Shown: one piece after another, positions 25,071 to 61,803 of the stretch | Numbering within the stretch: position 1 is the stretch's first letter | Layout: each line of letters starts with the position of its first letter | Virus record (IMG/VR): IMGVR_UViG_3300023174_000036 | Coordinates: 248,001-312,000 of that record | Direction: 5' to 3' (one strand) | DNA length: 64,000 nucleotides | Position numbers and translations under genes: made by a program | The notes under the pieces: model-generated | Told to the model about the DNA's origin: nothing | The model's database searches: none | What the model saw: only the letters and a program-made list of their open reading frames with translations

Positions 25071-25075
25071 ATAGA

Positions 25076-25327: not shown

Positions 25328-25401
25328 TGGAGCGGGTAGCGAGAATCGAACTCGCGAATAAACCTTGGCAAGGTTTCAGGTTACCATTACATCATACCCG
25401 C
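25328..25401 (-). tRNA. tRNA-Gly(GCC)
   Basis: Cloverleaf, U73, CCA. Confidence 0.95.
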
Positions 25402-25660: not shown

Positions 25661-26268
25661 GAAAATTCTGGACGTTTAAAATTTATATTAAACGAAATAC
25701 TTATACGTTCATCATCTGTGTAATTTGCAGGAACACCGTGATTTAACCAGCCCGGAAACAAAATAAATTTACCAATCTTAGGTTCGTAAGATACGTTGTT
25801 TGGAAGATGTTCAAGCAAATATGTTGAAAACTGCGGAACTGGATTCATAAAATTTATGCTGCCGTCATCGCCATTTGTTCTGTAATAATAAACACCTGCA
25901 ATGTCTACACTGCCATGATTGTGTGTATGTGCAAATTCATTTTTTCCAGTATTGGTCATCCAAGATTGTATAATTCTAAATTCTTGTATCTTGCTCACTG
26001 GCACGTCTAGCATTCGCATGTACTCAAACACATGAAACTTCAAAGCGTCAATAAACGCAGTGGTTTGATAGTCCAACAGTAGATTGGATTCGAACGATGT
26101 GTCTGACAATTTGTGTGTGTTTGGCAACCATTGCTCGTTGTGTTTGAACGAATCCTTTGCTTTCAAATCCGCAACTACCCGATCTAATTCTGATTGTACT
26201 GCAATTAATTCGTCGCCCTCAATCACACTGTTATAAATTGGTGTTGCAAAGTATCCATGAACGCTCAT
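25657..26268 (-). CDS. 2OG-Fe(II) oxygenase (phage TIGR02466-like)
   Basis: SWMT...HTHNH...LFPGWLNHGV...RISISFN. Confidence 0.85.
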   Translation of the reverse strand: MSVHGYFATPIYNSVIEGDELIAVQSELDRVVADLKAKDSFKHNEQWLPNTHKLSDTSFESNLLLDYQTTAFIDALKFHVFEYMRMLDVPVSKIQEFRIIQSWMTNTGKNEFAHTHNHGSVDIAGVYYYRTNGDDGSINFMNPVPQFSTYLLEHLPNNVSYEPKIGKFILFPGWLNHGVPANYTDDERISISFNINFKRPEFS

Positions 26269-26304
26269 ACATATCCTTTATTTTAGAATATTTATTTTTA
26301 TGCT

Positions 26305-26379
26305 TGGTGGTAATAGTAGGATTTGAACCTACACCTTGCTCCGTATGAAGGAGGTGCACTACCGTTATGCTATATTACC
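26305..26379 (-). tRNA. tRNA(CAT): elongator Met or Ile2
   Basis: Loop TT-CAT-AC, G1-C72, CCA; identity not decidable by eye. Confidence 0.85.
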
Positions 26380-26380
26380 A

Positions 26381-26481
26381 TATGTAAACACACTAAGGTG
26401 TATTAAGTATGCGGGCTATGCCTATCGCAGTGACTGGGATACCAAACCTGATCTTTTTACAGATTAAAGTATGTTTACATA
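26381..26481 (-). ncRNA. Stem-capped small RNA D
   Basis: TATGTAAACATACT...AGTGTGTTTACATA terminal stem between two tRNAs. Confidence 0.4.
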
Positions 26482-26556
26482 TGGTAGGGGCACAGGGAAT
26501 CGAACCCTGATAGACTGGTTAAAAGCCAGCTATTCTAGCCGTTGAATTATACCCCC
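26482..26556 (-). tRNA. tRNA-Lys(TTT)
   Basis: Loop CT-TTT-AA, CCA. Confidence 0.95.
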
Positions 26557-26560
26557 ATAT

Positions 26561-26636
26561 TGGTCCACTCAGTCGGATTCGAACCGACACCTCATTGATT
26601 AAGAGTCAAGTGCGCTACCATTAACGCTACAAGTGG
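26561..26636 (-). tRNA. tRNA-Lys(CTT)
   Basis: Loop CT-CTT-AA, CCA. Confidence 0.95.
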
Positions 26637-26747
26637 TTGGTCGTAATTAAATTGATTTAATGTGCCAACCAGGACCAATACGGGGTCTAGATTGACACTA
26701 ACGTTTAGCACGTTTCATGTCGTTCTCCTTATGAACATTTTTAAAAA

Positions 26748-26804
26748 CAGGATGCTTATTTTTCAATTAAAAGTTGAATTTTTGAATTTGCTGTTCGCAT
26801 CCTA
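26748..26804 (-). ncRNA. Y-like ncRNA copy 3 (57 nt, ACAGCAA family; Lys(UUU)-like anticodon arm)
   Basis: TAGGATGC-GA-ACAGCAA...TTCAA-CTTTTAA-TTGAA...GCATCCTG. Confidence 0.65.
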
Positions 26805-26808
26805 AACT

Positions 26809-26883
26809 TGGTACTCCGAACGGGTTTCGATCCCGCTTCTCCAACTTGAAAGGCTGGCGTCCTAGCCACTAGACGACCGGAGT
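26809..26883 (-). tRNA. tRNA-Glu(TTC) copy 2
   Basis: Loop CT-TTC-AA, CCA; sequence divergent from copy 1. Confidence 0.9.
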
Positions 26884-26888
26884 ATATT

Positions 26889-26963
26889 TGGTAGCCAATG
26901 ATGGGAACGATCCATCGACCCTCGCCTTATCAAGACGATGCTCTACCACTGAGCTAATTGGCT
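26889..26963 (-). tRNA. tRNA-Ile(GAT)
   Basis: Cloverleaf, CCA. Confidence 0.95.
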
Positions 26964-26968
26964 ATATT

Positions 26969-27044
26969 TGGTGGAGGTGACAGGGATCGAACCTGCGACA
27001 TCTTGCTTGCAAAGCAAACGCTCTCCCAACTGAGCTACACCCCC
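26969..27044 (-). tRNA. tRNA-Ala(TGC)
   Basis: G3:U70, CCA. Confidence 0.95.
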
Positions 27045-27052
27045 ATATTATA

Positions 27053-27802
27053 TTATTTGATGGAGTTTATTTTAACTAGACCAAAAAATTTCAAAATTAA
27101 AATTATCCCATACGCCAGATCAAATTCCCACCATTTTTCTGAAAATTTAGCTTTAGTGGTATCATCATGATGGTTGGCAGCCAACTCTTCGCCGACGTAC
27201 AGCAGTCCTATAGGAAACATGTTCCGAGAACGATCAGCGCCTTTGGCTGGCCTATTTCGATATCCTATTGTGTGACTTAGATAGTTATGCGCACGAAGAT
27301 GGAACTGTGTATATACAAACAAGATAACACCAAATACCACTCCCCATATACCAAACGCAATTAAAGCCAAAATTCCTGCTATTGGATATCTATATTTAGA
27401 ATACTTTACTAATTGATGTTCTAGTTTATCAGTGTATACAGGCACATCGTTACCCCATTTTTCAATTTCCTCAGGAGTCAAATAGTACGCTGGAGTAGCT
27501 GGAGATGGCTCTTGAGTGAAAAACAAATCTATTTTACTGAAGTAAATTGGACTGTGTGGATCATCCGGTGTGTCAGAAGTAGCATGATGCTTTCTATGAC
27601 CCGCAACAAATGCACGGACAGAATCACCAGGATACCAAAAACCTATAAACCATAACCATGTTCTAGAAAAATATTCTAATCTAGTACTTACTATAGAAAC
27701 TGATCGATGGGCCAATATTCTATGAATATAAATTGCATAAACATTGCAAGTTATGAAAAAAATTGTTAGATAACACCACAACATCCACTGATAATCAAGC
27801 AT
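27053..27802 (-). CDS. Membrane fatty acid (acyl-CoA/acyl-lipid) desaturase
   Basis: His boxes HRILAH, HRKHH, NHH; DPHSP; FDL. Confidence 0.85.
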   Translation of the reverse strand: MLDYQWMLWCYLTIFFITCNVYAIYIHRILAHRSVSIVSTRLEYFSRTWLWFIGFWYPGDSVRAFVAGHRKHHATSDTPDDPHSPIYFSKIDLFFTQEPSPATPAYYLTPEEIEKWGNDVPVYTDKLEHQLVKYSKYRYPIAGILALIAFGIWGVVFGVILFVYTQFHLRAHNYLSHTIGYRNRPAKGADRSRNMFPIGLLYVGEELAANHHDDTTKAKFSEKWWEFDLAYGIILILKFFGLVKINSIK

Positions 27803-27862
27803 GTATTGCTCCTTAAATATATTGAATATTTATTGATAACTCAGTATGCTTGATTACTTGAT

Positions 27863-27938
27863 TGGCTCCACAGCCTGGGCTCGAACCAGGGACCAAATGA
27901 TTAACAGTCATCTACTCTACCAACTGAGCTACTGCGGA
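27863..27938 (-). tRNA. tRNA-Asn(GTT)
   Basis: Cloverleaf, CCA. Confidence 0.95.
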
Positions 27939-27945
27939 ATAAACT

Positions 27946-28020
27946 TGGCGGTCCCAAGGAGGATCGAACTCCTAACCTCGGCGTGACAAGCCGACATTAT
28001 AACCATTTAACTATGGGACC
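27946..28020 (-). tRNA. tRNA-Asp(GTC)
   Basis: Cloverleaf, CCA. Confidence 0.95.
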
Positions 28021-30154: not shown

Positions 30155-30225
30155 AATATAATTCCTTTTAAAATAATGACATTTGTCATGCTTATAGTAT
30201 ACATTAGTACTATCTATAGGTCAAG

Positions 30226-30250
30226 AAAAAAGGCACTCGAAAGTGCCTTC
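30226..30250 (-). terminator. Terminator after tmRNA
   Basis: AAGGCACT-TTCG-AGTGCCTTTTTT. Confidence 0.85.
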
Positions 30251-30592
30251 TTTGGTTATTGGTTTACAAGGCTAACCAGCCCCGGAGTTGCGGTTTCTTA
30301 GGCCGCCATTGCAAAGTCTGCATCATTAGCTGAAAAAGCTACTGAAGCTGGAACTTTGAAATACTCGAATGTATTTGCGTTTGCATTTACGAGTTTTGCT
30401 TGATTTACAGTCATCGCCTACTGAGTTGCCGTCTCCATTATCTCACCCTGTCGAAACCATGGCTGGCCCATCATAAACACATTAATGAGGAATCTAGGCG
30501 GATTGCAAGACCCAATGATTAATATGTTTATGGTGGACCAGGTGGGAGTCGAACCCACGTCCAGAATGCCTTCACTTTGAAGGGATTACAAC
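30251..30592 (-). ncRNA. ssrA: Circularly permuted (two-piece) tmRNA
   Basis: Acceptor piece with T arm and CCA at 30531-30592; hairpin intervening segment 30470-30530; coding piece starts GGGCCAG at 30469 (G3:U70); tag ORF 30384-30298. Confidence 0.9.
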
Positions 30593-30608
30593 TATCTCTT
30601 TAACCACA

Positions 30609-30812
30609 TTACTGTGGTTGAATATTTGCTGCCTGCAAGCCTTTTTGACCTTGTACTACATCAAATGATACTGATTGATTCTCTTGCAGAACTTTGAATC
30701 CTGATGTCTGAATCGCTGAGTAGTGAGCAAACAAATCCTCACCACCGTTGTCTGGAGTAATAAACCCAAAACCTTTGGTTTCATTAAACCATTTTACTTT
30801 ACCTGTTGCCAT
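30609..30812 (-). CDS. cspA: Cold-shock protein
   Basis: [15 protein letters not shown] (RNP1), DLFAHYS (RNP2). Confidence 0.95.
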
Positions 30813-43496: not shown

Positions 43497-45401
43497 TTAC
43501 TTCTTGTCTGCGGGGTCAACCTCTGTGAAGGCCGCATCCACAGTTTGTTCACCACCTTCAGTTTGTGGTGCATTTTTGGCCTGCTCAGCGGCTTGTTTTT
43601 TAGACATAACCGGATTGGCCGCTTCAAAAAATGCAGTTAACGAAGTAGTGATAGCTTCTACATCTTCACCAGCAATTGCTGTTTGCACAGATGCCAATGC
43701 TGTTTCGTATGCAGTCTTTTCTTCTTCAGTCAACTGATCTTTGAATTCTTCAAAGTCTTTCTTAACACCGTGCGTGGTAGATTCTGCATTGTTACGTGCA
43801 TCAATCAACTCACGAGCTTTTTTATCAGACTCTGCATTTTCTTCAGCTTCCTGTACCATGCGTTGGATCTCAGCTTCGGTTAATCCCGAGTCTGACTTAA
43901 TAGTGATATTGTTTTCTTTACCAGTATTTTTATCTTTAGCACTGATTTTCATAATGCCGTTGGCATCGATATCAAATGTAACTTCAATTTGTGGCATACC
44001 GCGTGGTGCAGGAGCAATGCCATCCAACTTGAACTCACCCAATGCTTTGTTGTATTTGAACAATTCACGTTCACCTTGTGCTACCTTGATGTCAACAGCT
44101 GGTTGATTGTCGTCCGCAGTACTGAATGTTTGACTAGCTTTGGTTGGGATAGTTGTGTTCTTTTGAATCAACTTGGTAAACACACCACCCATTGTTTCAA
44201 TACCTAGTGATAATGGAGTAACGTCCAACAATAGAACGTCTGTCTTATCGCCTGCCAACACAGCACCTTGTACTGCGGCACCAGCGGCAACTGCTTCGTC
44301 TGGGTTAACATCTTTGCGTGGCGCCTTGCCAAACAGTTTCTCAACTGCTTCTTGTACTTTAGGCATACGTGTTTGTCCGCCAACTAGGATAACTTCATCA
44401 ATGTCAGCGGAAGTCACTTTAGCGTCCTTCATAGCAATCTTACATGGCTCAATTGATCGCTCGATAAGTTGCTCAACCATTGATTCAAACTTAGCACGAC
44501 TAATAGTTACATTCATGTGCTTAGGACCGCTTGCATCTGCGGTAATGTACGGCAAGTTAACACTGGTACTTGCTGTGCTAGACAACTCAATCTTGGCTTT
44601 CTCAGCTGATTCTTTCAAGCGTTGCAGAGCCAACATGTCTTTCTTCAAATCAATGCCAGAATCTTTCTTAAACTCGTCAACCAAATGATCCATGATAACT
44701 TGGTCAAAGTCTTCACCACCTAGGAATGTGTCGCCGTTTGTGCTTAGTACTTCGATTTGTTTATCGCCGTCGATATTCGCGATTTCAATGATCGAGATGT
44801 CGAAAGTACCACCACCAAGGTCGTAAACAGCAATTTTCCTATCTCTTTTATCAGCTTTATCAACGCCATAAGCAAGAGCTGCCGCAGTAGGCTCATTAAT
44901 AATACGGAGTACTTCCAAACCGGCAATGCGGCCAGCATCTTTAGTTGCTTGTCTTTGGCTGTCGTTAAAGTACGCAGGAACTGTGATAACTGCTTGGGTA
45001 ACTTCATGACCTAAATAGTCCTCCGCGGTCTTTTTCATTTTACGCAACACTTCAGCTGACACTTGCTGTGGTGCAAGTTTCTCGCCGTTAGCTTCGATCC
45101 ACGCATCACCGTTGTCAGCTTTGATGATTGAATAAGGCATTAGATCAATATCTTTTTGCACAGCTGATTCGTCAAACTTGCGGCCAATGAGACGCTTGCT
45201 TGCGTAGATTGTGTTTTTGGGGTTTGTGACTGATTGTCGTTTTGCTGTGGCACCTACTAGAATTTCTTTTTCTGTATATGCAACGATTGATGGTGTTGTT
45301 CTAGCACCTTCGCTGTTTGGGATTACTTTAGCAACTCCGCCTTCTAGGATTGCTACACAGCTATTTGTTGTACCTAAATCGATACCGATGATTTTGCTCA
45401 T
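43497..45401 (-). CDS. dnaK: Chaperone DnaK (Hsp70)
   Basis: [36 protein letters not shown]. Confidence 0.98.
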
Positions 45402-45455
45402 AATTTTCTCCTTTAAATTAAGCAAGAATATGTAAAACCCTTACGGCGTTTTACA
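45402..45455 (-). promoter_or_regulatory. ROSE-like RNA thermometer upstream of dnaK
   Basis: GUAA-capped hairpin, then UUCUUGCUU-AAUUUA-AAGGAGAA; near-identical to hsp20 leader. Confidence 0.65.
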
Positions 45456-46624: not shown

Positions 46625-47018
46625 CTGTGTCGTCCTCGTCTTGTTTGATTTTTTCAATAATCCAGTCTAAATTATAAATTCTATTTTTACTAATCAACTT
46701 ATAAGGAATGGTATCATCGTTAGTTATATAGTAAGAATTAGGATGAGCCAATAAAAATGTAATAAAGTGACTTGTGATTAAATCACAATTATCAACATCA
46801 ATAATTATAACTTCAACTTGTTGTGCAATACTCAGTAACCAACCAATATCGTGATCGTCTTCGTCGTACACAAATACATTTACATCATCTAAAATCTGGC
46901 TTAAAATAATTTGAAACTGCTCTTTAACTTGAGTAGATGGTTTGATTAACAGATAGCTAAGGTTCATATTGAACAACTTATCCGGCGGTGTTATCAGGGT
47001 AATTTTTCCTAAGTTCAT
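46608..47018 (-). CDS. Hypothetical protein
   Basis: ORF in operon. Confidence 0.7.
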
Positions 47019-47322
47019 ATATCCTTCTTGCGAAATATTCCAGTTTATCTTTTGGATAACTATTAAACCTTGGACCGTCTGTGTTAGTTTTCTCTAAGAA
47101 ATCTGCCAATTCAGGTTCCGCGATATTATCTACTGCAACTTGTTCAAATGCACCTTGTGAATAATAAGTGTACAATTCGTCGATGGGTTTCATCTCGGGT
47201 CTTGCTATTATTCTATTCCAAATTGAGTTTGATTCTTGTTGTTCTTCGTTTTGTATGTAGCCTATTCTCGAGCCTTGATCTGTATCGTCCCTGTTTCGTC
47301 CTTGATCATGTAAGTCTTTTTT
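46978..47322 (-). CDS. Predicted -1 frameshift extension of the 47262-48512 protein (includes ORF 46978-47193)
   Basis: -1 frame open from A_AAA_AAG (47316-47322) to 46978. Confidence 0.55.
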   Translation of the reverse strand, partial: KKDLHDQGRNRDDTDQGSRIGYIQNEEQQESNSIWNRIIARPEMKPIDELYTYYSQGAFEQVAVDNIAEPELADFLEKTNTDGPRFNSYPKDKLEYFARRIYELRKNYPDNTAG

Positions 47323-48512
47323 TTTGACTCTTCTGATGCGGGCTCAATAACTTCTGTCAAATCAGGTTTGATTCTGTCACCTGTTACTTCTATGAAAGTA
47401 TTGTCAGCAGTTATTGTTTCAGGATGATAGCGTTTTGCCTCTTCTTGTTTTATAGCTTCATGTTCCAACTCGCGTTCAGCTTGTTCGATCATCTTGTTCC
47501 ATTTTTCTAGCTCTGACTCTTCAGTGAATGGTACTGAAGGTTCCTCCGATGCTGTTATATCACCTCCTAGTGCAGTCAACGGTGTTTCGCTTGGAACTTC
47601 TGTGTGTGTGGGTTCTATGACAGTAGGTTCGATAACTATGCTATTTCCGCTCTCCGTAGTCAGGCTGTCATCCTCTGCTGATTCTTCTTTGGGAATATAT
47701 TCTTGTGGTTGAGGTACAATGTCGTTAATACTTACAGGTACTGGTTCGACTTCTTCTTTCTTCCAACCAAAAGTCATCTGTGCGGCCAGCAACATGATAA
47801 CTGCTAGCGGATCAAACACAACAACAATAAGAACAATGATCCATGTTACTGCTTTTTCCAACATGTTTTCATCTGCGCCATGATCGCCGTAGATGAATTT
47901 AGCAATATATTTTATCGGACCAACTTCCGCTTCAACTTTTCGAACTTCGGCCGCAATTGGCGCACGTTCTTCGTTGAGTCCGGCGATTTTCTTTTGAGAC
48001 TCTGCAATGTCTTGAGCGATGCGACTACGTTCTTTCTGCTGGGCTTTTCGAATGGCAACGGCTTTTTCTGCGCCCTTTTCATCCGAACTGCGACCCATAA
48101 CTTGGTCCACCGATTCATCAAGCTGTTTGAGCACTTTGCGATTAGCATCTATGTTTTCTTTTTCTGTTTTGATTTTTTCGTCGTATATGGCAATCTTACT
48201 TTGAACATCGCCGCTGACTAAATTTTGATCATTGTGTGCTTTACTTAGGAATCCAAAGATGCCCATCGATGTTATAATCATTAACACAATCACCGCAGTG
48301 ATCATATAATATTTTATAAAACGTGGAGCACGTTCCCAATTGGCTTTTAACCAAGAGGCACACACAAGTTTACCAACTTCCAAAGCTGAACCCATAATGA
48401 TAATTGGAATTACTGCCGCTGAAAATATTGCGGTAAGACCTACTACTGAGTAATAGATCGCTACCGCAGATATTGTTAAGCCAGTAAGAAGTAGTAACCA
48501 GGCTAAAATCAT
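47262..48512 (-). CDS. Inner-membrane coiled-coil protein with acidic C-terminal region
   Basis: Three N-terminal TMs, coiled coil, IVVVFDPLAV TM. Confidence 0.85.
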   Translation of the reverse strand: MILAWLLLLTGLTISAVAIYYSVVGLTAIFSAAVIPIIIMGSALEVGKLVCASWLKANWERAPRFIKYYMITAVIVLMIITSMGIFGFLSKAHNDQNLVSGDVQSKIAIYDEKIKTEKENIDANRKVLKQLDESVDQVMGRSSDEKGAEKAVAIRKAQQKERSRIAQDIAESQKKIAGLNEERAPIAAEVRKVEAEVGPIKYIAKFIYGDHGADENMLEKAVTWIIVLIVVVFDPLAVIMLLAAQMTFGWKKEEVEPVPVSINDIVPQPQEYIPKEESAEDDSLTTESGNSIVIEPTVIEPTHTEVPSETPLTALGGDITASEEPSVPFTEESELEKWNKMIEQAERELEHEAIKQEEAKRYHPETITADNTFIEVTGDRIKPDLTEVIEPASEESKKKTYMIKDETGTIQIKARE

Positions 48513-52966: not shown

Positions 52967-54067
52967 TTATAATTCTGGTAATGCATCATACTCTAATGTC
53001 TCGCTCATTACACCTAGTACGTAGTTAGTACTTTCGTTTTCTTGTAATGCAGTTTGTTTCTTGCTGGTATCACTGTGTTTGTTGAACCAAGGAATTGGTG
53101 TTGACTTTGGAGCACTTGATTGATATTTGATCCCAATTTGTTTAAGCGCATCAACTGCTGTGTAGTCCACAAAGTCACGAAGGATGTTTGCATTGAGTCC
53201 AATGACTGGCCCCATCTTGAACAGATAACTGGCCCAATCTTTTTCTTCACGAATCACATCCATGTACAGTGCGTAGACTTCTGCTTCACATTCTGTTTTG
53301 GCTTCAACAAAGCGTGGATCTTCTTTGACTACTTGATTGATCAAATACGCAGTCCAACCTTTGTGCAACAGTTCGTCTTGCAAGATCAAACTGATAATAT
53401 TACCATTGCCAATAAAGATTTTATTCTCAACCATGGCCAAACTAGTGGCAAACGATGTCATAAATCGAAACGCTTCCAAAGCATAGCTGGCATGCAATGC
53501 CATCCAAATGGCTCGAATATGTTCTTTCTCTGTGACTTCCATACCAAGTTCTTTACGACAATTAATTTGATGTAATGCATCGTAGTAATTACCCACACTA
53601 CTAGCCATGTCAATAATTTCTTTAGTGTCGTGGATTGTGTTGAACACATCCTTAGGCACGTTGTAAATGTTACGGATAATATGACTATAACTTTTGCTGT
53701 GAATATTGGTTTCAAAAAATCCCCAGTTGTACATCAATGCCTCAACTTCAGGCAAGCTACACACTGGTGTGAACACTTGTGTTGGCCCACGGCCTTGCAA
53801 ACTATCCAACGCTGTTTGACGTAACAAGTTGCTGGTAAAAATATGTTTCACAGCATCACTTGCTTCTTTGAAGTCGTTTGAATCTTTGGTAAGACTTACT
53901 TCTTCCGGTTGCCAAAAGAAGCCACGTGCAGTAGCATCAAAGTCTGCAATCTTTTTGTATTTGACTTCTTCAAAGCGTTGGATAGTCACCGGACCTGCTG
54001 GATCCAGAAACATCTTACGGCTTAGGTAGTCTGTTTTTGTTGTTAAGTTATATTGTGCGGTGCTCAT
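52967..54067 (-). CDS. nrdB: Class Ia ribonucleotide reductase beta subunit
   Basis: FWQPEEV, ETNIHSKSY, LEAFRF, DELLH, QENE..NY. Confidence 0.95.
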   Translation of the reverse strand: MSTAQYNLTTKTDYLSRKMFLDPAGPVTIQRFEEVKYKKIADFDATARGFFWQPEEVSLTKDSNDFKEASDAVKHIFTSNLLRQTALDSLQGRGPTQVFTPVCSLPEVEALMYNWGFFETNIHSKSYSHIIRNIYNVPKDVFNTIHDTKEIIDMASSVGNYYDALHQINCRKELGMEVTEKEHIRAIWMALHASYALEAFRFMTSFATSLAMVENKIFIGNGNIISLILQDELLHKGWTAYLINQVVKEDPRFVEAKTECEAEVYALYMDVIREEKDWASYLFKMGPVIGLNANILRDFVDYTAVDALKQIGIKYQSSAPKSTPIPWFNKHSDTSKKQTALQENESTNYVLGVMSETLEYDALPEL

Positions 54068-54723
54068 TAATATTTTCCTGATGCAAGTACTATCTTGCAA
54101 ATATGTTCTAATCTTTCTATGTGCTCATATGCACGCCAAGGACTAGTGTCAATAGCAACAACTCCGTGTCCTTTGATGCCTACAATGTCATAGGCAATGT
54201 TTCCCATCTTGTCTAATTGTAACATCTTATGACACTGATCCGCAAGCTCTTGACTGATAGGAGGTACATCTCCCACATTGGGTGCAACCTTGGTATAACG
54301 ATTCAATTCTGGAAACGCATCGCTAATAGTGCTGAGATCGATACCGGCATGCATTGCGGCAATACAGTAAGTAGGATGAACATGTACTACTACTCGAACT
54401 TCTCCACTGTGCTGGCCCATTTCTTTTTGTAAGCCAAAATGTAATGGAATCTCACCGCTGGGTACTAGATTTTTACTGATATCGGTATACGGCAAATCTC
54501 TCCAACTATAACCAAAGATGCCTGTGCCGTTGCCACTATTGATAGTTCTATCAATTGCAATTTTTTTGAACTGATCAGGTTGTAGAGTTTGTTTACGTAC
54601 ACCGCTTGGTGTAATGTAAAAGTGATCACGGTCGTGATGACGAATACTCACGTTACCATCACGACTGGTAATCCAGTTACGCTTGTAAGCGTCTACCATT
54701 ATGTCACATATTGTTTCTAACAT
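54067..54723 (-). CDS. Class II aldolase/adducin family protein
   Basis: DGNVSIR, ITPSG, SGEIPLH, HVHP, GHGV. Confidence 0.9.
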   Translation of the reverse strand: MLETICDIMVDAYKRNWITSRDGNVSIRHHDRDHFYITPSGVRKQTLQPDQFKKIAIDRTINSGNGTGIFGYSWRDLPYTDISKNLVPSGEIPLHFGLQKEMGQHSGEVRVVVHVHPTYCIAAMHAGIDLSTISDAFPELNRYTKVAPNVGDVPPISQELADQCHKMLQLDKMGNIAYDIVGIKGHGVVAIDTSPWRAYEHIERLEHICKIVLASGKY

Positions 54724-57044
54724 TACAGTTTACAAGACTCGCAGTCTTCCTCGCTATCAAAATCTATTGGCTCCAGCATTGTAGGAGCTTCTTCTGCTTT
54801 CATCTTACTGCCTGCTTTGTTAATCAAACTATAGTAAAATGTTTTTAAACCCCACATGTGTGCTTGCATCAAATTCTTAGCAATCAATGTGGTTGGCACT
54901 TTGCGATCTGCAAAATGTGCTGGATTATAGAATGTGTTGGTGCTGATACTTTGATCCACATATGCCGCAAGCACTGCACTGGTTTTCAAATAACCGTCAC
55001 AGTCTTTTTGATCCCACATCATTTGATACTTGTTCTTGAGTTTGTGATATTCTGGTACCACTTGCACAAACGATCCTGCTTTGGATTCTTTCACACTGAT
55101 CAAGCTCATTGGCATTTCGATACCGTTAGTACTGTTGATAACAACGCTTGAACTTTCTACCGGAGCGATAGCCATCAGTGTAGCATTGCGAACACCGTAC
55201 TGTTTCATATTGACTCGTAGGGTTTCCCAATCTAGTTCTGGGGTAAAGTCAGCTAGTTCATTTACACCGTTGGCTCGTAACTCCCACGGAAACGTACCCT
55301 GGCCGTATCGTGTGTGTGAGCTATGCTGACAAGCACCACGCTCTCGGGCCAACTCAACTGTTGCTTCCGTTAAGTAAAACGCTTGATGTTCCATCCATGC
55401 TTTAACGTCTTGTAATGCATCTTTTTCGCCGTAGCGTAACCCACGCTTGGCATGCCAGTAGGCAAGGTTAGTAACACCAATGCCCAATGGTTGTATTTCA
55501 TCATTGCTTAACTTAGACTGGATAGATAAGAAGTCTTGGTAATCAAGTATGTTGCATAGACTACGCTGTAAAATGCGGCAAGCACGGCGCATGTCTTCTG
55601 GATTACGGAATGCTCCCCAGTTGATCGAGCCGAGTGTGCAAAGAGCAATGCGGCCATCAGCATCATCAAGACGCTTGAAAGATTTAGTAGGTAATAGTAT
55701 TTCACAGCATAAGTTACTTTGGTAAATTGTATGATACTCTGGGTCGAATGGTCCTTGTTTCATTACATTGTCAATAAACACAAGATAGATACGTCCTGTA
55801 TCAGTGCGCTCTTTCAGTATGCCCGACTTGAACACTTCTTCGGCTGACATTGTTTTCTTGCGAAAACCTTTTTGTTTTTCATATTTTACGTACAATTCTT
55901 CAAACAGTTGTGTATTTGCATAAAAGGCTTCGTACAAGTCAGGTACTTCATTGGGGTCAAAGAATGTTATGTCTTCTTTGTTTTTAAATCGTCTCCAGAA
56001 GAAAGCACTAAGCACAACCCCATAATCCATATGACGGACTCGGGTTTCTTCTGTTCCTTGGTTGTTTTTAAGAACAATAAGATCATCAAACTGATGATGC
56101 CAAATAGGATAGAATACAGTAGCACTTGCATTGCGAATACCTCCTTGTGAACATGATCGCAAATCACCAAACCATTTCTTCAAGAAAGGTATCATACCAG
56201 TGTGCATGATTTCGCCGCCGCGAATCGGGGAGCCCAATGGGCGTAAGCGACCGATTTCCAATCCGATCCCCGCACGTTTACTGGCATACTTGGCCATCAT
56301 TTCGCCTGACGCGAAAATACTGTCCAAATCATCATCCGAGCGAATAAGAACGCAACTACTAAATTGCTTAGTAGGCGTACCAAGCCCTGCCAACACTGGC
56401 GTGGCCAATGTAAATAGTCCGTCACTTGCGGCATTGTAATACTCCTTAATGTAACGCATACGAGCTGTATTAGGCTCTTCTTTGTGAAAGATTGTTGCTG
56501 ATGCAATCATGTACCTAATTTGTGGAGTTTCGTAAGTTTGTTTAGTACTGCGGTTTTTAACAAGATACTTTTCAATCAATTGTTCAATGGCCGCATACGA
56601 ATATGTTTCGTCCTTTTCGTGATCCAACATATCGTCCATTCGATTCCAATCTTCTTCGGTATACCATTCCAGAAGTTCACTGGTATACAAACCAGTTGCT
56701 ACATTTTTCTGCACAATGGAATATAAACTGGGAACTTCATAATGACCATACACATCTTTGCGTAGCATACTCAGTCGTTGTTTGCCTGCCACATATTGAT
56801 AATTAGTGTGACCAACATCTGGATTATTTTCTACATCAATAAGGTCTACTATAGCACGGAGTGTTATACCATCAATTTCTTCTGTAGTGATTCCATCATA
56901 GAAGTGAGGCTGTGCTTTGATTTCTATCATACTCTGACTGACGTCAGCTATACCTTTACAGACTTTGGCCACCTGCGCTTGCCATTTTTCAATGGTCAAC
57001 GGTTCTTTTTCACCGTTTCTTTTTATTACTGTAATTTTATTCAT
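54723..57044 (-). CDS. nrdA: Class Ia ribonucleotide reductase alpha subunit (with ATP cone)
   Basis: VIKRNG, SSCVL, SNLCCEI, APVESSS, KTFYY, C-terminal CESC. Confidence 0.97.
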   Translation of the reverse strand: MNKITVIKRNGEKEPLTIEKWQAQVAKVCKGIADVSQSMIEIKAQPHFYDGITTEEIDGITLRAIVDLIDVENNPDVGHTNYQYVAGKQRLSMLRKDVYGHYEVPSLYSIVQKNVATGLYTSELLEWYTEEDWNRMDDMLDHEKDETYSYAAIEQLIEKYLVKNRSTKQTYETPQIRYMIASATIFHKEEPNTARMRYIKEYYNAASDGLFTLATPVLAGLGTPTKQFSSCVLIRSDDDLDSIFASGEMMAKYASKRAGIGLEIGRLRPLGSPIRGGEIMHTGMIPFLKKWFGDLRSCSQGGIRNASATVFYPIWHHQFDDLIVLKNNQGTEETRVRHMDYGVVLSAFFWRRFKNKEDITFFDPNEVPDLYEAFYANTQLFEELYVKYEKQKGFRKKTMSAEEVFKSGILKERTDTGRIYLVFIDNVMKQGPFDPEYHTIYQSNLCCEILLPTKSFKRLDDADGRIALCTLGSINWGAFRNPEDMRRACRILQRSLCNILDYQDFLSIQSKLSNDEIQPLGIGVTNLAYWHAKRGLRYGEKDALQDVKAWMEHQAFYLTEATVELARERGACQHSSHTRYGQGTFPWELRANGVNELADFTPELDWETLRVNMKQYGVRNATLMAIAPVESSSVVINSTNGIEMPMSLISVKESKAGSFVQVVPEYHKLKNKYQMMWDQKDCDGYLKTSAVLAAYVDQSISTNTFYNPAHFADRKVPTTLIAKNLMQAHMWGLKTFYYSLINKAGSKMKAEEAPTMLEPIDFDSEEDCESCKL

Positions 57045-57261: not shown

Positions 57262-59175
57262 TTATAGGTAGCTGGAATAAGAATAGTTAAAATAACCCTG
57301 ATCAGTTTGGTTACCCCAAGCAAGATTGGTGTAATAAATTCCAATTGATGTTGGTACTTGTCCTGGTGCGCCCGTGAATACAACACCGGCAGCATCAATA
57401 AACTGAGCTTTGAAATCCAATAACATTTGGTTATTACCAGACGGGTCAGTGCCAGCAAAGTTATAGTCATCACTCAACTGTAATTTGGCATTTAGAACAT
57501 CAGCCACTATTTGAATAGTGCCTTGTCTAGTGAAATTTTGTGCTGTGCTTTTATAAAAATATTTGATAGTGTGTGTAATACTTTCTGTGGGAACTCCAAA
57601 TGCATCAGTTGAACATGGCAATCTAAAAGCCAAGTCAGCAGTGGTTCGATAACCTAAAATAATTTTATTAAACATTTGAGGAGCGTAACTACCATGTCCA
57701 GCAAACTCAGGCACATACTGAGTAGTCAGCACCAAAGAAGTTGCCATCTCAATGTGTCTATCAGATATATCATTCACACTGCCGTTGCCATATGTGGCAA
57801 AATATATTTGCGGATATCGGGCGCTGAGACTACTGGTGCCACCGTCATTGCCTACATTTTTGTATATGCAATTTCTAGTGGTATTGTTAGTGCCAAGACC
57901 TAGATACACTGCATGTCTTTTAATGTTGTTGAATCTGCAATTGGTAATATTGGTGTTGCGCGGTCCGTACTGTTGTCCCACGGTCTGTCCATCGGCACCT
58001 TCTCCAAACACAAAACTTTGATAACCGTTATCAAAGAAACAGTTTTCAAAATCGTTATCAATTATGTCTTGTTTTGCGTATACTGCGTATGTAAAGTTTG
58101 TAAATCGAATATTTTTAAACAAGTTAGCAGAGCAAGTGACCAAACTGCTAAAACTGTTCAATGCAATACCAACGTTTTTAGTATTGGTTACTCCGCCCCA
58201 ATCGCCTTGTAAATTTAAATCCGTAAACTTACTGTCTTTGACACAGTTCAAAGTCAAACATCCGTTTTTACCAGTAGGTGCATGAATAGTCATGCCTTCT
58301 AATTCAATGTTACGTGGTTGATTACTGTTGGTGGTTGATGAGATGATGGACGGATTTCCAACTGTTGATGTATCATTAACAAACTCTATGGCAGACTTGG
58401 TCAATGTAACAGTAAATGTTATGGCAGTTTGTGTGACTGTGGCGTTGGCGCTCAGCGTTACACTAACGTTGGGAACAACACTAACAATAGTAGCTCCAGC
58501 AGGAATTCCGTTGCCGGTTATCAATGCACCGACCATACGTGCATTTGCTCCGCTGGTAGTTAATAAAGACTGTCCATTAGTAGTTGCACCTGTAACAGTA
58601 GATACTGGATTATAATATATGAAAGTCTTATCGGCGCCTGCACCTACTATGCTTGCATATGCCGGAACATATAATGTAGACGATATGTTATATACACCAG
58701 GTTGTAGTACCAATGTTACTCTAGTTCGTTTGGCAATAACCGATGTACCTGACGATTTGGTAGTGGGATTTAAAAATAACTGATTGATAGCACGTTGTAG
58801 TGTAACAGTATCGTCCGCAACTCCATTGCCAGTTACACCAAAATCGTAAGCTGAAACAACATCATCTAATTTGTCTTGTAGTAATCGTGTAGTGGGATTA
58901 TTGGCTGTGGGACCAGTAGTTATGCTGGAATCGGTAGCATGATAAATGTGTTTGATAGTGTTAAGAATGTTGAATTGTGTTTCAAGATCCTTTTGCGTAA
59001 GAATTTTTGTATTTCCTACTGCCGGACTGCCTTCGCTGACAGCTCCGTTGCCAATGTACAATTCCTGACTATCAATGGCCCACGCCATTTCGCCCGATGC
59101 CAATTGAGGTAGCCCAGTACCACTATTAATTTTACCGCGTCGAACTTGAATTCGACTAATTTGAACCACAGCCAT
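57262..59175 (-). CDS. Virion/tail protein with pectate-lyase-like beta-helix
   Basis: ISRIQVRRG...GEMAWAIDSQELYIG anchor; DFGVTGNGVADDT. Confidence 0.8.
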   Translation of the reverse strand: MAVVQISRIQVRRGKINSGTGLPQLASGEMAWAIDSQELYIGNGAVSEGSPAVGNTKILTQKDLETQFNILNTIKHIYHATDSSITTGPTANNPTTRLLQDKLDDVVSAYDFGVTGNGVADDTVTLQRAINQLFLNPTTKSSGTSVIAKRTRVTLVLQPGVYNISSTLYVPAYASIVGAGADKTFIYYNPVSTVTGATTNGQSLLTTSGANARMVGALITGNGIPAGATIVSVVPNVSVTLSANATVTQTAITFTVTLTKSAIEFVNDTSTVGNPSIISSTTNSNQPRNIELEGMTIHAPTGKNGCLTLNCVKDSKFTDLNLQGDWGGVTNTKNVGIALNSFSSLVTCSANLFKNIRFTNFTYAVYAKQDIIDNDFENCFFDNGYQSFVFGEGADGQTVGQQYGPRNTNITNCRFNNIKRHAVYLGLGTNNTTRNCIYKNVGNDGGTSSLSARYPQIYFATYGNGSVNDISDRHIEMATSLVLTTQYVPEFAGHGSYAPQMFNKIILGYRTTADLAFRLPCSTDAFGVPTESITHTIKYFYKSTAQNFTRQGTIQIVADVLNAKLQLSDDYNFAGTDPSGNNQMLLDFKAQFIDAAGVVFTGAPGQVPTSIGIYYTNLAWGNQTDQGYFNYSYSSYL

Positions 59176-59202: not shown

Positions 59203-59919
59203 TCAGTTTTCTCTGTAGTACTGCTCCACCCTATTCCACCACTGCTTTTCCCAGTGAGCAAACATGTCTGGGGTAAGAATAAACTCCTGATAAGCCGGTT
59301 CTCCCCAAACCATAGGTGTAATTTCGGGAGGTTTTACGCACATGAATACTACACCTTTGCGAATGTTGGTCTTATGTACTTCGTTATGAGCCAGCGCATA
59401 AGCCACCATTTGCAAGTAATAGTCTTCAATCCACTCTTCTTTTTTGGGTTTGTTGGTTTGTTTATGGTCCATGATTGCACCCTCATTCAAATGAAGTCCT
59501 ACACAATCAGTAGTTCCCGCATATAAACCTGGATAATACAAACCAACTTCAACACCCCACACTTCGTTAACGTTTTTAAGTCCATGTTCGATAATGTGTT
59601 TGGCCATCTTGTGACTTTGCACACTGTATGGATTTGATCCTGGATCGTTGAGTGTGCCTTGCACAATGTAATCTTCCAAATACTTGTGCATACGTGTACC
59701 GCGGCTGGCAGCTTCGGTAACAATCTCAGTGGCTTTCTTTTCGCCCACAGATCGCCGCCATGCTTGTAAGGCGGCAACTTTTTCTGCTGGTTTGGTTTTG
59801 TCTAGTATTGTTGTAACGGATGGCAGTTTGCCACCGTCTGGCGTGGCGTATAAACGCTTGCCTTCTACACTTTCTCTGTTTAGGGGAGTGTAGTCATATC
59901 TTTCAGTTAATAAGGTCAT
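59203..59919 (-). CDS. PD-(D/E)xK exonuclease
   Basis: PSVTTIL, RGTRMH, YAGTTD, IMDHKQ, QMVAYA. Confidence 0.9.
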   Translation of the reverse strand: MTLLTERYDYTPLNRESVEGKRLYATPDGGKLPSVTTILDKTKPAEKVAALQAWRRSVGEKKATEIVTEAASRGTRMHKYLEDYIVQGTLNDPGSNPYSVQSHKMAKHIIEHGLKNVNEVWGVEVGLYYPGLYAGTTDCVGLHLNEGAIMDHKQTNKPKKEEWIEDYYLQMVAYALAHNEVHKTNIRKGVVFMCVKPPEITPMVWGEPAYQEFILTPDMFAHWEKQWWNRVEQYYREN

Positions 59920-59956
59920 ACAGTATGTTAAACTATATGACCTTATTTGTCAATGC

Positions 59957-60319
59957 TTATTTGCCTAATTTGGTTGCACGTTTTGCCATTTTCTCAACTT
60001 CGCCGGTTTTTTCTCCGCCTTGTTGTTGTCTGTTTTGTTGATTATTGGTTTTTAACACAATGCCTTGACCATCAAATCGATCAATGAACTTTTTCAGTAA
60101 TGGGCCTTCTTGTGGATCATCCCAACGGGCAACAAATGCATCATATGCTTCAGCATCACTGTCACCCAGTGTGGGCATGTCTCTATTGGCCAATTCAGTG
60201 TTTAATGTATCCCATCGAAGATTGCCTTCGATTCCGTTAGGGCCTTGATTGTTTGCGTCTGATTGAAGAACCCAAAGAATACGTTCTAAGGGTTCTATGT
60301 TCTCAATTATTTTTTTTTT
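59957..60319 (-). CDS. Predicted -1 frameshift extension of the 60307-61302 protein (includes ORF 59957-60193)
   Basis: -1 frame open from the A10 run at 60310-60319 to 59957. Confidence 0.55.
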   Translation of the reverse strand, partial: KKKIIENIEPLERILWVLQSDANNQGPNGIEGNLRWDTLNTELANRDMPTLGDSDAEAYDAFVARWDDPQEGPLLKKFIDRFDGQGIVLKTNNQQNRQQQGGEKTGEVEKMAKRATKLGK

Positions 60320-61302
60320 GAAGCTAACAACATGCCCAACTTGCGGCTATAGTCAATGCTTTCACGCTTCTCACGACCCACTTCAGGTGCTGGAGGAGTT
60401 TCTTCTGCTGGTGCGGCGCCTGACATGTCAGCGGCCATGCCTGCCATTGCATCACCTCCCATGGAAGGCAATCCGCCTGTTGGTGCAGGTGCGCCCATTG
60501 TTGGTGCTTCACCGCCTGATACTAAAGATAAGCCTGTTGATAGACCGGTTCTTGAAGTTTCTAATGCTGTGTATACTGCCTCTAATGCAGGTTTAACTGC
60601 ATCTTGATATTGTTGTGCAACATCACTTCCTTGAGTTTCTCTTATAGAGTCCATTAGTTCAAGCAATTGTTCTGCTTTCATTGCGGCCACATCTTCTAGC
60701 CAGCCTGTAATACGGTCTACCATGTCTTTTGTAGCCATGATGATTTCGGCCTTGTCTTCTTCGCCTTCAGCAAGAATATAACTTGCTTGTGATTCTGTTA
60801 AGTCGTAACGAATTGATAATTCTGCTTTGAGTTCTGCGTTGTCGCTTTCGCCCAATGTCATTCGTTGAATTGCACTGTTGATCCAATTTGATGGAACTGA
60901 AAACCCTTTAGCACGTTGTCCAATAATGGTTGCTTTGTATTGGTTAACACTTTCATTTTTCTTTTGTTTTTTCATTGTTTCTTCTTCGTCTTGTGATTCA
61001 TCAAGATCGCACTCACATGGCGCTTTGTGGCAATCACTGCATTTGCCTTCTTCGCGTTCCATGATTTCTTGATTGATAACATCAAGCAAAGCACGAGTCT
61101 TTTGATAAGCTGGACTTCCACTCAATGAGTCAAAACTTTCATTCATTTCGAGTTGGCTCATTTCAGTGCGTAGTTTGTTTTGCACGTCTGAAAGCTGAAC
61201 ATCGTTGAATTGTTCCAGTTTCAATTTGTATCCAAAGTTCTTAGCTAGACTTTCGTTGAGTCTTTTGCTAGTAACAGGTTTTGATAGTTCTCTAATTTGC
61301 AT
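60307..61302 (-). CDS. Probable head-assembly/scaffold-like protein
   Basis: Acidic helical protein with P/A/G-rich tail; TAAATA upstream; function inferred only. Confidence 0.6.
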   Translation of the reverse strand: MQIRELSKPVTSKRLNESLAKNFGYKLKLEQFNDVQLSDVQNKLRTEMSQLEMNESFDSLSGSPAYQKTRALLDVINQEIMEREEGKCSDCHKAPCECDLDESQDEEETMKKQKKNESVNQYKATIIGQRAKGFSVPSNWINSAIQRMTLGESDNAELKAELSIRYDLTESQASYILAEGEEDKAEIIMATKDMVDRITGWLEDVAAMKAEQLLELMDSIRETQGSDVAQQYQDAVKPALEAVYTALETSRTGLSTGLSLVSGGEAPTMGAPAPTGGLPSMGGDAMAGMAADMSGAAPAEETPPAPEVGREKRESIDYSRKLGMLLASKKK

Positions 61303-61341
61303 GATGGCGTCCTAAGATATCTTATTGTGTATTTATACTTT

Positions 61342-61803
61342 TCAGCTGGCGAAAGTCCATTTAAAAGACTGTGATATTTGATTCTTGTAATGATCCGACC
61401 TATCCTGACTGTATTCCAACTTATTTAACAATATCAAATACCTATCATAATCAATAGACTTCTTGGCAATGTTGTTTTTGAATACTAGTGTATCACAATA
61501 ATGCGTCCAATAGTGCCTATCCAACTGCTTGATACTGTTGAATTTATTAAGGTCTAATCGATGATATGCTTTTGCGGCCATAAGAGCACAGGTTTTGAGA
61601 TAAAACTGTTCTATGAATGGCCCGGATTTGTAATGTAGTGCCCAGTTTTTAAATTTGTCTAATTTAATTACAAATTCTTTATAAACAATGTCGCCGTTAG
61701 GCTGTATGCTTATAGGCAGAGTTTTTGCAAGGTCTACTTCAAACTGTCCAGCAAGTTCTTTGATAAATTTAGGTTTGGGTTTATTTGATTTTTTCATTTG
61801 CAA
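61342..61803 (-). CDS. Hypothetical protein
   Basis: ORF in operon. Confidence 0.7.
   Translation of the reverse strand: MQMKKSNKPKPKFIKELAGQFEVDLAKTLPISIQPNGDIVYKEFVIKLDKFKNWALHYKSGPFIEQFYLKTCALMAAKAYHRLDLNKFNSIKQLDRHYWTHYCDTLVFKNNIAKKSIDYDRYLILLNKLEYSQDRSDHYKNQISQSFKWTFAS

What the first reader, a model, noticed from the sequence alone, without database searches (positions are those of the whole stretch)
59957..60319. Second predicted -1 frameshift (A_AAA_AAA just before the stop) in a late structural gene
Seen: ORF 60307-61302 ends TCA AAA AAA AAA TAA. The -1 frame is open from this A10 run (KKKIIENIEPLERILWVLQSD...) through ORF 59957-60193, which otherwise has only an internal TTG or ATG start. 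This would add about 117 aa. Two Lys-run shift sites in one window suggest deliberate use (inference); short and long isoform pairs are typical of phage assembly proteins.
Basis: partly seen in the sequence, partly recalled or inferred. Interest (0 to 1): 0.65.

Follow-up and report, generated by a model that had tools for sequence, protein, structure and literature searches.

The report
Conserved -1 recoding site, jumbo phage
A run of ten A's just before the stop codon of a jumbo-phage gene is a deeply conserved signal that lets some copies of the protein continue in the -1 frame and gain an extra 117-residue, winged-helix-like domain; this is a new example of a known trick, not a new kind of system.

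Summary
Gene 60307-61302 (-) ends TCA AAA AAA AAA TAA, and the -1 frame is open for 117 more codons. This is not a homopolymer error. In all 79 related phage contigs (56-100% protein identity) the downstream domain sits in the -1 frame. The junction is always (T/C)CA AAA AAA AA[G/A/C] TAA, while flanking synonymous sites vary freely. The -1 ORF has no conserved start codon, and its protein conservation begins at the junction. Three independent DNA assemblies carry the same A10.

In more distant relatives the same domain is a separate gene with its own ATG, usually overlapping the stop as ATGA. The A-run therefore replaced a start codon. A second gene in the window (A9 at 47317-47325) has the same conserved TC-A9-G plus -1 ORF.

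The molecular route is unresolved. RNA-polymerase slippage on A9-10 (about 45%) and ribosomal -1 frameshifting on A_AAA_AAG (about 40%) give the same protein. A conserved hairpin lies 10-16 nt downstream; its role is unclear.

The protein's function is unknown. The "structural" label rests only on a weak PHROG match. This is a new member of a known kind, of moderate interest.

The parts
60307..61302 (-). Gene A, the zero-frame product: 331 aa, all-helical, with a disordered Ala/Gly/Pro-rich linker (residues 265-310), a basic C-terminal helix and a ...LLASKKK end.
   Evidence: ORF list and translation. AF2 model pLDDT 74. More than 2300 homologous 90%-identity clusters, all labelled 'hypothetical'. 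PHROG 14154 matched by 49 of 53 members.
60310..60319 (-). Shift site: the A10 run (C-A10), read in the zero frame as tcA AAA AAA AAA. Relatives have C-A9-[G/A/C].
   Evidence: In 61 of 61 non-identical relatives the motif is (T/C)CA AAA AAA AAN, with N = G in 49, A in 8 and C in 4.
60307..60309 (-). Zero-frame TAA stop directly after the run. It overlaps the first codon after the shift (ATA) in the -1 frame.
   Evidence: TAA in 61 of 61 relatives. Genome-wide, TAA makes up 72% of stops.
59957..60310 (-). The -1 frame extension: 117 codons plus a TAA stop, translated only after the shift.
   Evidence: It is in the -1 frame in 80 of 80 loci. Protein conservation starts at the junction. There is no conserved start codon. 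Codon-position entropy is 1.05/0.83/1.49.
60041..60310 (-). Compact winged-helix-like domain (extension residues 1-90).
   Evidence: AF2 pLDDT of 85-96 over residues 30-90. Fold matches are weak, but nearly all are winged-helix domains; the best is the MCM8 WH domain at Z 5.2.
59960..60040 (-). Disordered basic tail ending in the conserved motif KMAKRATK.
   Evidence: pLDDT about 42. The motif is conserved in the alignment and in stand-alone relatives.
60267..60296 (-). RNA stem-loop AGAACCC..AGAA....TTCT..GGGTTCT, starting 13 nt after the run.
   Evidence: strand folding z = -2.93 here and -4.3 to -6.2 in four relatives. The mean z over 53 relatives is -3.25, against -0.34 for a control region. 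Lineage-specific compensatory stems occur.
47316..47327 (-). Second site with the same cassette: TCA AAA AAA AAG inside gene 47262-48512. The -1 ORF 46978-47343 continues from it.
   Evidence: TC-A9-G and the -1 product are conserved in about 45 of 49 relatives, and four have TCT-A8-G. Two contigs carry A10, which gives an in-frame fusion.

Best explanation
This is a programmed -1 recoding site that makes two proteins from one gene. Standard decoding gives the 331-aa gene A protein ending ...SKKK. A fraction of the product continues in the -1 frame from the A-run and gains a 117-aa module: a winged-helix-like domain plus a basic KMAKRATK tail. The long isoform is 448 aa. I put about 0.88 on recoding of some kind being real and selected. 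For the route, I commit, by a narrow margin, to RNA-polymerase slippage. On the 9-10 A·T pairs, which match the length of the RNA-DNA hybrid, the nascent RNA realigns and one extra A is inserted. Ordinary translation of that mRNA then reads straight into the extension. Transcripts with 0, +2 or +3 A's still give the short form, because the other two frames close at once or, in most relatives, within two codons. What is shown: the conservation, the frame relation, the lack of a start codon, the coding signal of the extension and the stability of the DNA run. What is inferred: that the shift happens at all, its route and its efficiency. The module probably works together with gene A, because relatives encode it next to gene A or fused to a gene A-like protein. 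The biochemical role of both proteins is unknown.
For: Recoding is supported as follows.
- 80 of 80 loci have the extension in the -1 frame.
- The motif (T/C)CA-A8-N-TAA is invariant in 61 non-identical sequences while the flanks vary.
- 120 of 120 top homologues end SKKK, SKKN or PKKK and are 252-342 aa long; none is fused.
- The profile search with the extension lists no gene A-sized protein carrying the domain at its C-terminus among its best 150 hits.
- There is no conserved start codon, and 8 of 61 sequences have none within 220 nt.
- Amino-acid conservation starts at the junction, and the extension shows coding periodicity and a confident fold.
- The A10 is identical in three independent DNA assemblies.
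- Distant relatives place an ATG exactly where this clade has [G/A/C]TA. L166, L169, L171 and L174 have an ATGA overlap; L167, L172 and L176 have a short spacer, with a Shine-Dalgarno-like stretch in L167 and L172. Synteny is kept (gene A, module, exonuclease, beta-helix protein).

The transcriptional route is supported as follows.
- All nine A's are conserved, which is more than the heptamer needs. This includes the wobble A of the preceding codon even where the residue changes (TCA in 59, CCA in 2). Both upstream Lys codons are always AAA, although AAG makes up 25% of Lys codons in this genome.
- Bacterial RNA polymerase slips efficiently on runs of 9 A/T, and Thermus thermophilus dnaX uses exactly this (PMC5009743).
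- The phage encodes both tRNA-Lys(UUU) and tRNA-Lys(CUU). The same review gives this condition as a reason for preferring slippage over A_AAA_AAG frameshifting.
- The second site has only the run, with no adjacent stop and no downstream structure.
- Long A/T runs are depleted in the genome.
- In the metatranscriptome X4 no RNA contig bridges the run. One stops at it with 2 unplaced letters. This is only a weak hint.
Against: No direct RNA or protein evidence was obtained. The reads tool returned only assembled contigs, which cannot show minor run-length variants. Several features fit a ribosomal route better.
- The run has the same phase at both sites (xxA AAA AAA AAN).
- The tenth base is G in 80% of sequences, which makes the classic A_AAA_AAG.
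- Four relatives at the second site have only A8 but keep A_AAA_AAG.
- A significant 3' hairpin is present.
- The polymerase that transcribes this gene is unknown.
- A third A9 run lies in frame inside a 546-codon ORF with no alternative frame (genome 163015-163023). Slippage there would be wasteful.
Confidence: 0.45

Rival explanations
1. Ribosomal -1 frameshifting. With Lys-tRNAs on AAA-AAG (or AAA-AAA) the ribosome slips back one base on A_AAA_AAG. Alternatively, the peptidyl-tRNA-Lys slips while the slowly decoded TAA sits in the A site (a 'shifty stop'), helped by the downstream stem-loop. It gives the same 448-aa product from unaltered mRNA.
For: - The canonical heptamer is in the correct phase in 61 of 61 sequences, and G is the tenth base in 49 of them.
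- A_AAA_AAG is among the most efficient E. coli motifs (PMC4066793).
- The TAA stop is invariant and immediately 3' of the motif.
- A stable hairpin lies downstream in 87% of relatives, with mean z -3.25 against -0.34 for controls. 75% of cells are paired against 28-48% in slid controls, and lineage-specific compensatory stems occur. It lies 8-13 nt beyond the stop codon in most.
- The A8 variants at the second site keep the heptamer.
Against: - Nine A's are conserved where seven bases would do.
- The hairpin spacing is longer than the usual 5-9 nt and varies: mode 13, range 1-31, and 23 in a clade with a 12-nt insert.
- A comparable hairpin is present in 4 of 7 distinct relatives that have an ordinary ATG start and no frameshift, so it may serve another purpose.
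- No Shine-Dalgarno-like element lies upstream, and the upstream 60 nt are unstructured (z -0.55).
- The phage carries tRNA-Lys(CUU), which should make AAG less shifty.
- The position of the stop is explained by descent from the ATGA overlap.
- The second site has no stimulator at all.
Confidence: 0.4
2. There are two separate proteins and no recoding. The downstream ORF would be translated on its own, by reinitiation after the TAA or from a non-canonical or internal start, as in the relatives where it is a separate gene.
For: In distant relatives the module is a stand-alone gene, coupled to gene A by an ATGA overlap or preceded by a Shine-Dalgarno-like stretch. Two of 61 clade members have an ATG as the second codon after the junction (L025 and L056).
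Against: - The codon aligned with the relatives' ATG is GTA, ATA or CTA here, and the next codons are not starts either.
- 8 of 61 sequences have no ATG, GTG or TTG within 220 nt. Where starts exist, their positions are not conserved and would delete the conserved first helix.
- No Shine-Dalgarno-like sequence is present.
- This reading does not explain why nine A's and the -1 phase are invariant.
Confidence: 0.05
3. It is an artefact or decay: either a homopolymer miscall that splits one ordinary ORF, or a recently broken gene.
For: Homopolymers are error-prone. One extra A would fuse the frames. At the second site two contigs do carry A10 and are fused.
Against: The same frame offset appears in 80 of 80 independent contigs from many samples. 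Most of them have A9+G rather than A10. Three independent assemblies agree on A10. Both parts remain under purifying selection at 56-70% identity.
Confidence: 0.02

Closest known systems
Thermus thermophilus dnaX (tau/gamma) programmed transcriptional slippage on A9
   Same: It has an invariant run of nine A's inside a coding region and produces two isoforms in a set ratio. The organism has separate tRNAs for AAA and AAG (PMC5009743; phage tRNAs).
   Different: In dnaX the zero frame gives the long product and slipped transcripts give the short one. Here the zero frame stops at once and the slipped form is the long one. The proteins are unrelated. Slippage is not demonstrated here.
E. coli dnaX and IS3-family (IS911, IS150) -1 ribosomal frameshifting on A_AAA_AAG
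   Same: It has the identical heptamer in the same phase and a 3' stem-loop. In the IS elements, two overlapping ORFs are fused into one product.
   Different: No upstream Shine-Dalgarno-like stimulator is present. The hairpin lies 10-16 nt away rather than about 6 nt, with variable spacing. The A-run extends to nine conserved bases. The zero-frame stop directly abuts the motif.
Phage lambda G/GT tail assembly chaperone frameshift (and T7 gene 10A/10B)
   Same: A phage gene has a shift site near its 3' end, which adds a C-terminal domain to a minority of molecules. This probably fixes the ratio of two forms that act together (for G/GT).
   Different: The slippery sequence differs (G_GGA_AAG in lambda; from my own knowledge). 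The gene is not between the tail tube and tape-measure genes. No sequence or fold relation was found.
Shigella flexneri type III secretion genes (mxiE and others): transcriptional slippage fusing two overlapping ORFs
   Same: A run of about nine identical bases at the junction of two overlapping ORFs is involved. Insertion of one base in the mRNA makes the fused, functional protein (mentioned; details from my own knowledge).
   Different: That is a bacterial regulator, not a phage protein. There the unslipped product is thought to be non-functional, whereas here the short form is conserved as a protein in its own right.

Membership tests
Programmed -1 ribosomal frameshift site (X_XXY_YYZ type) | A slippery heptamer in phase with the zero frame | tested here: met
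   A_AAA_AAG, A_AAA_AAA or A_AAA_AAC is in phase in 61 of 61 non-identical sequences.
Programmed -1 ribosomal frameshift site (X_XXY_YYZ type) | The -1 ORF is open from the site, encodes conserved protein, and has no start of its own | tested here: met
Programmed -1 ribosomal frameshift site (X_XXY_YYZ type) | A stimulatory element at the canonical distance: a 3' structure about 5-9 nt away, or a 5' Shine-Dalgarno-like element | tested here: inconclusive
   A significant hairpin exists, but it lies 10-16 nt away with variable spacing. It also occurs in non-frameshifting relatives. No Shine-Dalgarno-like element was found.
Programmed -1 ribosomal frameshift site (X_XXY_YYZ type) | The trans-frame protein is made from unedited mRNA | not testable with these tools
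   This needs raw RNA reads and proteomics. Only contigs were available.
Programmed transcriptional slippage (A9/T9 type) | A homopolymer run of about 9 or more, conserved at nucleotide level beyond coding needs | tested here: met
   A9-10 is present in 61 of 61 sequences. The wobble A of TCA/CCA and the AAA Lys codons are invariant.
Programmed transcriptional slippage (A9/T9 type) | The run length is heterogeneous in RNA but not in DNA | tested here: inconclusive
   DNA contigs are uniform. RNA contigs cover both ORFs but break at the run, and one ends with 2 unplaced letters. Contigs cannot show minor variants.
Phage tail assembly chaperone G/GT | The gene pair lies between the major tail and tape-measure genes, and family domains are present | tested here: not met
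   The neighbours are an exonuclease, a beta-helix protein and ribonucleotide reductase. There are no Pfam or PHROG chaperone matches.
Winged-helix domain (for the extension) | Helix-strand-helix-helix-hairpin topology, and clear structural similarity to solved WH domains | tested here: inconclusive
   The topology fits: H7-21, E30-32, H33-42, H52-63, E76-79, E83-86. Matches are almost all WH domains but weak: Foldseek E 0.3 or worse, best Z 5.2. There is no sequence match.
PHROG 14154 'virion structural protein' (for gene A) | A significant match over most of the family profile | tested here: inconclusive
   49 of 53 members match, with best E 7e-12. The match covers only profile positions 35-116 of 771. 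No match was found in GenBank phages by tblastn.

The most novel reading that the evidence does not exclude
The TC-A9-G run may be a lineage-wide recoding cassette of these ~350-kb freshwater jumbo phages, used in at least two unrelated genes. It would have evolved by replacing an ATGA-coupled start codon. At this site it might be part of a feedback loop. The winged-helix-like domain made by the shift would bind the conserved stem-loop that lies in its own coding sequence, 10-16 nt from the shift site. It would thereby set the short:long isoform ratio. This would be a protein-dependent frameshift signal like that of cardiovirus 2A, whose stem-loop also sits unusually far (about 13 nt) from the slip site (from my own knowledge), but in a phage.
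Probability: 0.07. Interest if true: 0.8.

Novelty: new member of a known kind. Interest (0 to 1): 0.55.

Why it matters
Gene callers split this locus into a 331-aa protein and a truncated or missing small ORF in thousands of metagenomic records, so the long isoform and its domain are missed. The family is abundant, with more than 2300 clusters at 90% identity, and is confined to uncultured large phages. It offers a clean natural series in which one module is expressed in three ways. It is a separately initiated and often coupled gene, an N-terminal domain of a longer protein, or a recoded C-terminal extension. That makes the evolutionary switch between start codon and slippery run directly visible. 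Two conserved sites with the same run in one phage lineage, one with and one without a hairpin and adjacent stop, make a good test bed. They could separate transcriptional from ribosomal slippage outside model bacteria.

Tried and rejected
- Searches of GenBank phages by megablast and tblastn with gene A, the extension and the conserved core found nothing.
- Pfam gave no significant family for either part.
- PDB sequence profiles gave nothing.
- Foldseek against the PDB gave no match for gene A. BFVD gave only uncharacterised phage proteins.
- The protein atlas returned only 'hypothetical protein' clusters from viruses.
- RNAalifold on MAFFT alignments found no consensus structure. The hairpin only became clear from per-sequence folding and a codon-anchored alignment.
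- An upstream nascent-RNA hairpin, which is a known slippage stimulator, was looked for and not found (z -0.55).
- A downstream structure at the second site was looked for and not found.
- A genome-wide scan for other zero-frame heptamers with long -1 extensions gave only three other candidates. One (TTTAAAATGA) has an ATG overlapping the stop; the others were not examined.
A single-protein search gave one locus.
- A literature search for DUF3008 found nothing.
- The intrinsic-terminator reading of the hairpin was rejected because no U-run follows it.
- The tail-chaperone G/GT reading was rejected on gene context.

Full report
**What is there.**
The window is bases 248001-312000 of a 356,312-bp IMG/VR virus record. 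CheckV estimates the record is 96% complete, so this is a jumbo phage known only from metagenomes. It has 39.9% G+C.

On the minus strand, ORF 60307-61302 encodes a 331-aa protein and ends TCA AAA AAA AAA TAA. The -1 frame is open from the run for 117 further codons, to a TAA at 59957-59959.

The A10 (60310-60319) is the longest homopolymer in the whole genome, which has one run of 10, three of 9 and thirteen of 8. Runs of eight or more A/T are under-represented in the window, with 8 found against 19 expected.

**It is not a sequencing error.**
DNA contigs from three different studies cross the run. X2 and X3 show no difference. X6 is a diverged strain whose only indels are two 3-nt ones elsewhere.

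A metatranscriptome (X4) has contigs on gene A (60506-61638) and on the extension (59881-60242), so the region appears in an RNA library. No RNA contig bridges the run. One stops exactly at it with two unplaced letters. That is at most a hint of run-length heterogeneity.

**Comparative evidence.**
A scan of viral contigs returned 80 related loci at 56-100% protein identity. The contig of one locus ends before the junction. In all 79 others, and in the window, the homologue of the extension lies in the -1 frame directly after gene A.

Among 61 non-identical sequences the junction is invariably (T/C)CA AAA AAA AAN TAA:
- N is G in 49, A in 8 and C in 4.
- The preceding codon is TCA in 59 and CCA in 2.
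- The stop is TAA in 61.
- Neighbouring synonymous positions vary freely.

In this genome AAG makes up 25% of Lys codons, TCA 21% of Ser codons and TAA 72% of stops. The run is therefore held by selection at the nucleotide level.

The -1 ORF has no conserved start codon. Eight of the 61 sequences have no ATG, GTG or TTG within 220 nt of the junction. Where starts occur, they are scattered. Amino-acid conservation begins at the first codon after the run (V/I-x-E-x-x-D-P-L...). Codon-position entropy in the -1 frame is 1.05/0.83/1.49 bits, as expected for coding sequence.

I ran the large word search once, because the claim rests on the absence of fused relatives. It found more than 2300 clusters. 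The best 120 are 252-342 aa long, and all end SKKK, SKKN or PKKK. The exhaustive profile search with the extension found 440 proteins. Among the 150 listed, none is a gene A-sized protein with the domain at its C-terminus.

**How the arrangement arose.**
The profile search also found more distant relatives in which the module is an ordinary gene of 110-119 aa, starting M-R/K-L/I-F-E-V/F. In others it is the N-terminal domain of longer proteins of 261-771 aa.

Their contexts keep the same gene order: gene A homologue, module, PD-(D/E)XK exonuclease, Mtd_N/pectate-lyase beta-helix protein, ribonucleotide reductase.

In L166, L169/L170, L171 and L174/L175 the module's ATG overlaps the stop of gene A as ATGA, again in the -1 frame. 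By its gene coordinates, the P0187 contig shows the same 4-nt overlap, but no DNA was available for it. In L167/L168, L172/L173 and L176 a short spacer precedes the ATG, with a Shine-Dalgarno-like stretch in L167/L168 and L172/L173.

The upstream gene in L167 is a clear gene A homologue (hhalign probability 99.95%, E 8.5e-38). It carries an inserted DUF3008 segment. In L166 the upstream gene ends ...KRESIEHRLRLTKLLVGR*, which matches ...KRESIDYSRKLGMLLASKKK* here.

The codon aligned with those ATGs is GTA, ATA or CTA in the window's clade. So the same module is expressed from its own start in some lineages and through a shift at an A-run in this one. This also explains why the zero-frame stop abuts the run: it marks the ancestral end of gene A.

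**The second site.**
Gene 47262-48512 encodes a 416-aa protein with predicted membrane and coiled-coil regions. It contains TCA AAA AAA AAG at 47316-47327, and a -1 ORF (46978-47343) continues from it.

Among 49 non-identical relatives, about 45 keep TC-A9-G in the same phase and four have TCT-A8-G. The -1 product is conserved from the junction at 40-83% identity. Two contigs from different samples carry A10 there and are fused in frame, which shows the fused protein is viable.

At this site the zero frame runs on for about 20 codons, and there is no downstream structure. Of the four runs of nine or more in the genome, two sit at such junctions.

**The hairpin.**
Across 53 relatives, the 70 nt after the stop fold far better than shuffles. 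The mean z is -3.25, and 87% are below -1.5. A control region inside gene A gives -0.34 and the upstream 60 nt give -0.55. With dinucleotide shuffles the window gives z -2.93 and four relatives give -4.3 to -6.2.

Best stems are 10-15 bp, with a free energy of -12 to -21 kcal/mol. Different lineages use different sequences at the same codons. On a codon-anchored alignment:
- 75% of cells pair, against 28-48% in slid controls.
- The covariation score is 0.20, against 0.06-0.12.
- 30 cells show changes on both sides, a count reached by none of 500 shuffles.

The stem starts 10-16 nt after the run in most sequences and 23 nt in a clade with a 12-nt insert. The overall range is 1-31. Four of seven distinct stand-alone relatives also have a strong hairpin at the equivalent codons. 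The structure is real. Its link to the shift is unproven.

**Mechanism.**
Both candidate routes give the same protein. For RNA-polymerase slippage, the arguments are:
- Nine A's are conserved where a heptamer would do.
- The run matches the length of the RNA-DNA hybrid, and bacterial polymerase is documented to slip on runs of 9 (PMC5009743).
- The phage encodes both tRNA-Lys(UUU) and tRNA-Lys(CUU).
- The second site has no stimulator at all.

For ribosomal frameshifting, the arguments are:
- The phase is fixed.
- G predominates as the tenth base, which makes A_AAA_AAG, a very efficient motif in E. coli (PMC4066793).
- The A8 variants keep the heptamer.
- A hairpin is present.

I rate slippage at about 45%, ribosomal frameshifting at about 40%, independent initiation at about 5% and artefact at about 2%.

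**What the proteins are.**
Gene A is predicted to be all-helical, with a disordered Ala/Gly/Pro-rich linker and a basic C-terminal helix. It has no Pfam, PDB or cultured-phage match. Its core (residues 175-257) matches part of PHROG 14154 'virion structural protein' in 49 of 53 members, with best E 7e-12.

The extension folds confidently into a small domain (pLDDT of 85-96 over residues 30-90). Its weak structural neighbours are almost all winged-helix domains; the best is the MCM8 WH domain at Z 5.2. It is followed by a disordered tail with a conserved KMAKRATK motif.

Function remains unknown. 'Late structural gene' is possible but not shown.

**Verdict.**
This is a new, deeply conserved and abundant example of a known kind of recoding. 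It comes with an informative evolutionary series and a second site in the same phage lineage.

Noticed in passing
window 47262-48512 and 46978-47343 (- strand); run at 47317-47325: A second conserved TC-A9-G site lies in a 416-aa gene with predicted membrane and coiled-coil regions, and the -1 ORF product is conserved from the junction. Four relatives have TCT-A8-G. Contigs L142 and L144 carry A10 and are fused in frame.
   Followed up: partly
window about 16184-28020 and 30207-30623 (- strand): ARAGORN finds a cluster of 27 tRNA genes, including both tRNA-Lys(UUU) and tRNA-Lys(CUU), and a permuted tmRNA-like gene with tag ANANTFEYFKVPASVAFSANDADFAMAA.
   Followed up: no
window 43497-45425 (- strand): A phage-encoded Hsp70/DnaK homologue is present (Pfam HSP70, E 3.6e-258).
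   Followed up: no
window 52967-57044, 57262-59175 and 59203-59919 (- strand): Directly downstream of the finding lie ribonucleotide reductase small and large subunits, a 637-aa Mtd_N plus pectate-lyase beta-helix (tailspike-like) protein, and a PD-(D/E)XK exonuclease. This gene order is kept in distant relatives.
   Followed up: partly
genome C1:163015-163023 (outside the window): A third A9 run (TC-A9-C) lies in frame inside a 546-codon ORF with no open alternative frame. I did not check whether it is conserved.
   Followed up: no
proteins P0162 (463 aa), P0187 (771 aa), P0163 and P0258; locus L167:2617-5392: In some relatives the winged-helix-like module is the N-terminal domain of a long protein. 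In P0187 and P0156 the C-terminus of that protein resembles gene A's (…KESMEYMRLSIEY… against …RESIDYSRKLGML…). The gene A homologue in L167 carries an inserted DUF3008.
   Followed up: partly
window 60310 (RNA run X4, record 20): A 159-nt metatranscriptome contig ends at the first base of the A-run with two letters that do not fit the DNA. DNA contigs of similar depth bridge the run cleanly. The letters could not be inspected.
   Followed up: no
L166:105-135; L167:4026-4050; L172 and L173, first 80 nt of the module gene: Stand-alone versions of the module gene, which have an ATG start and no frameshift, often carry a strong hairpin at the same codons (xLVLLLRN) as the frameshift clade. An example is CTTGTGCTAC...GTAGCACAAG in L166.
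   Followed up: partly
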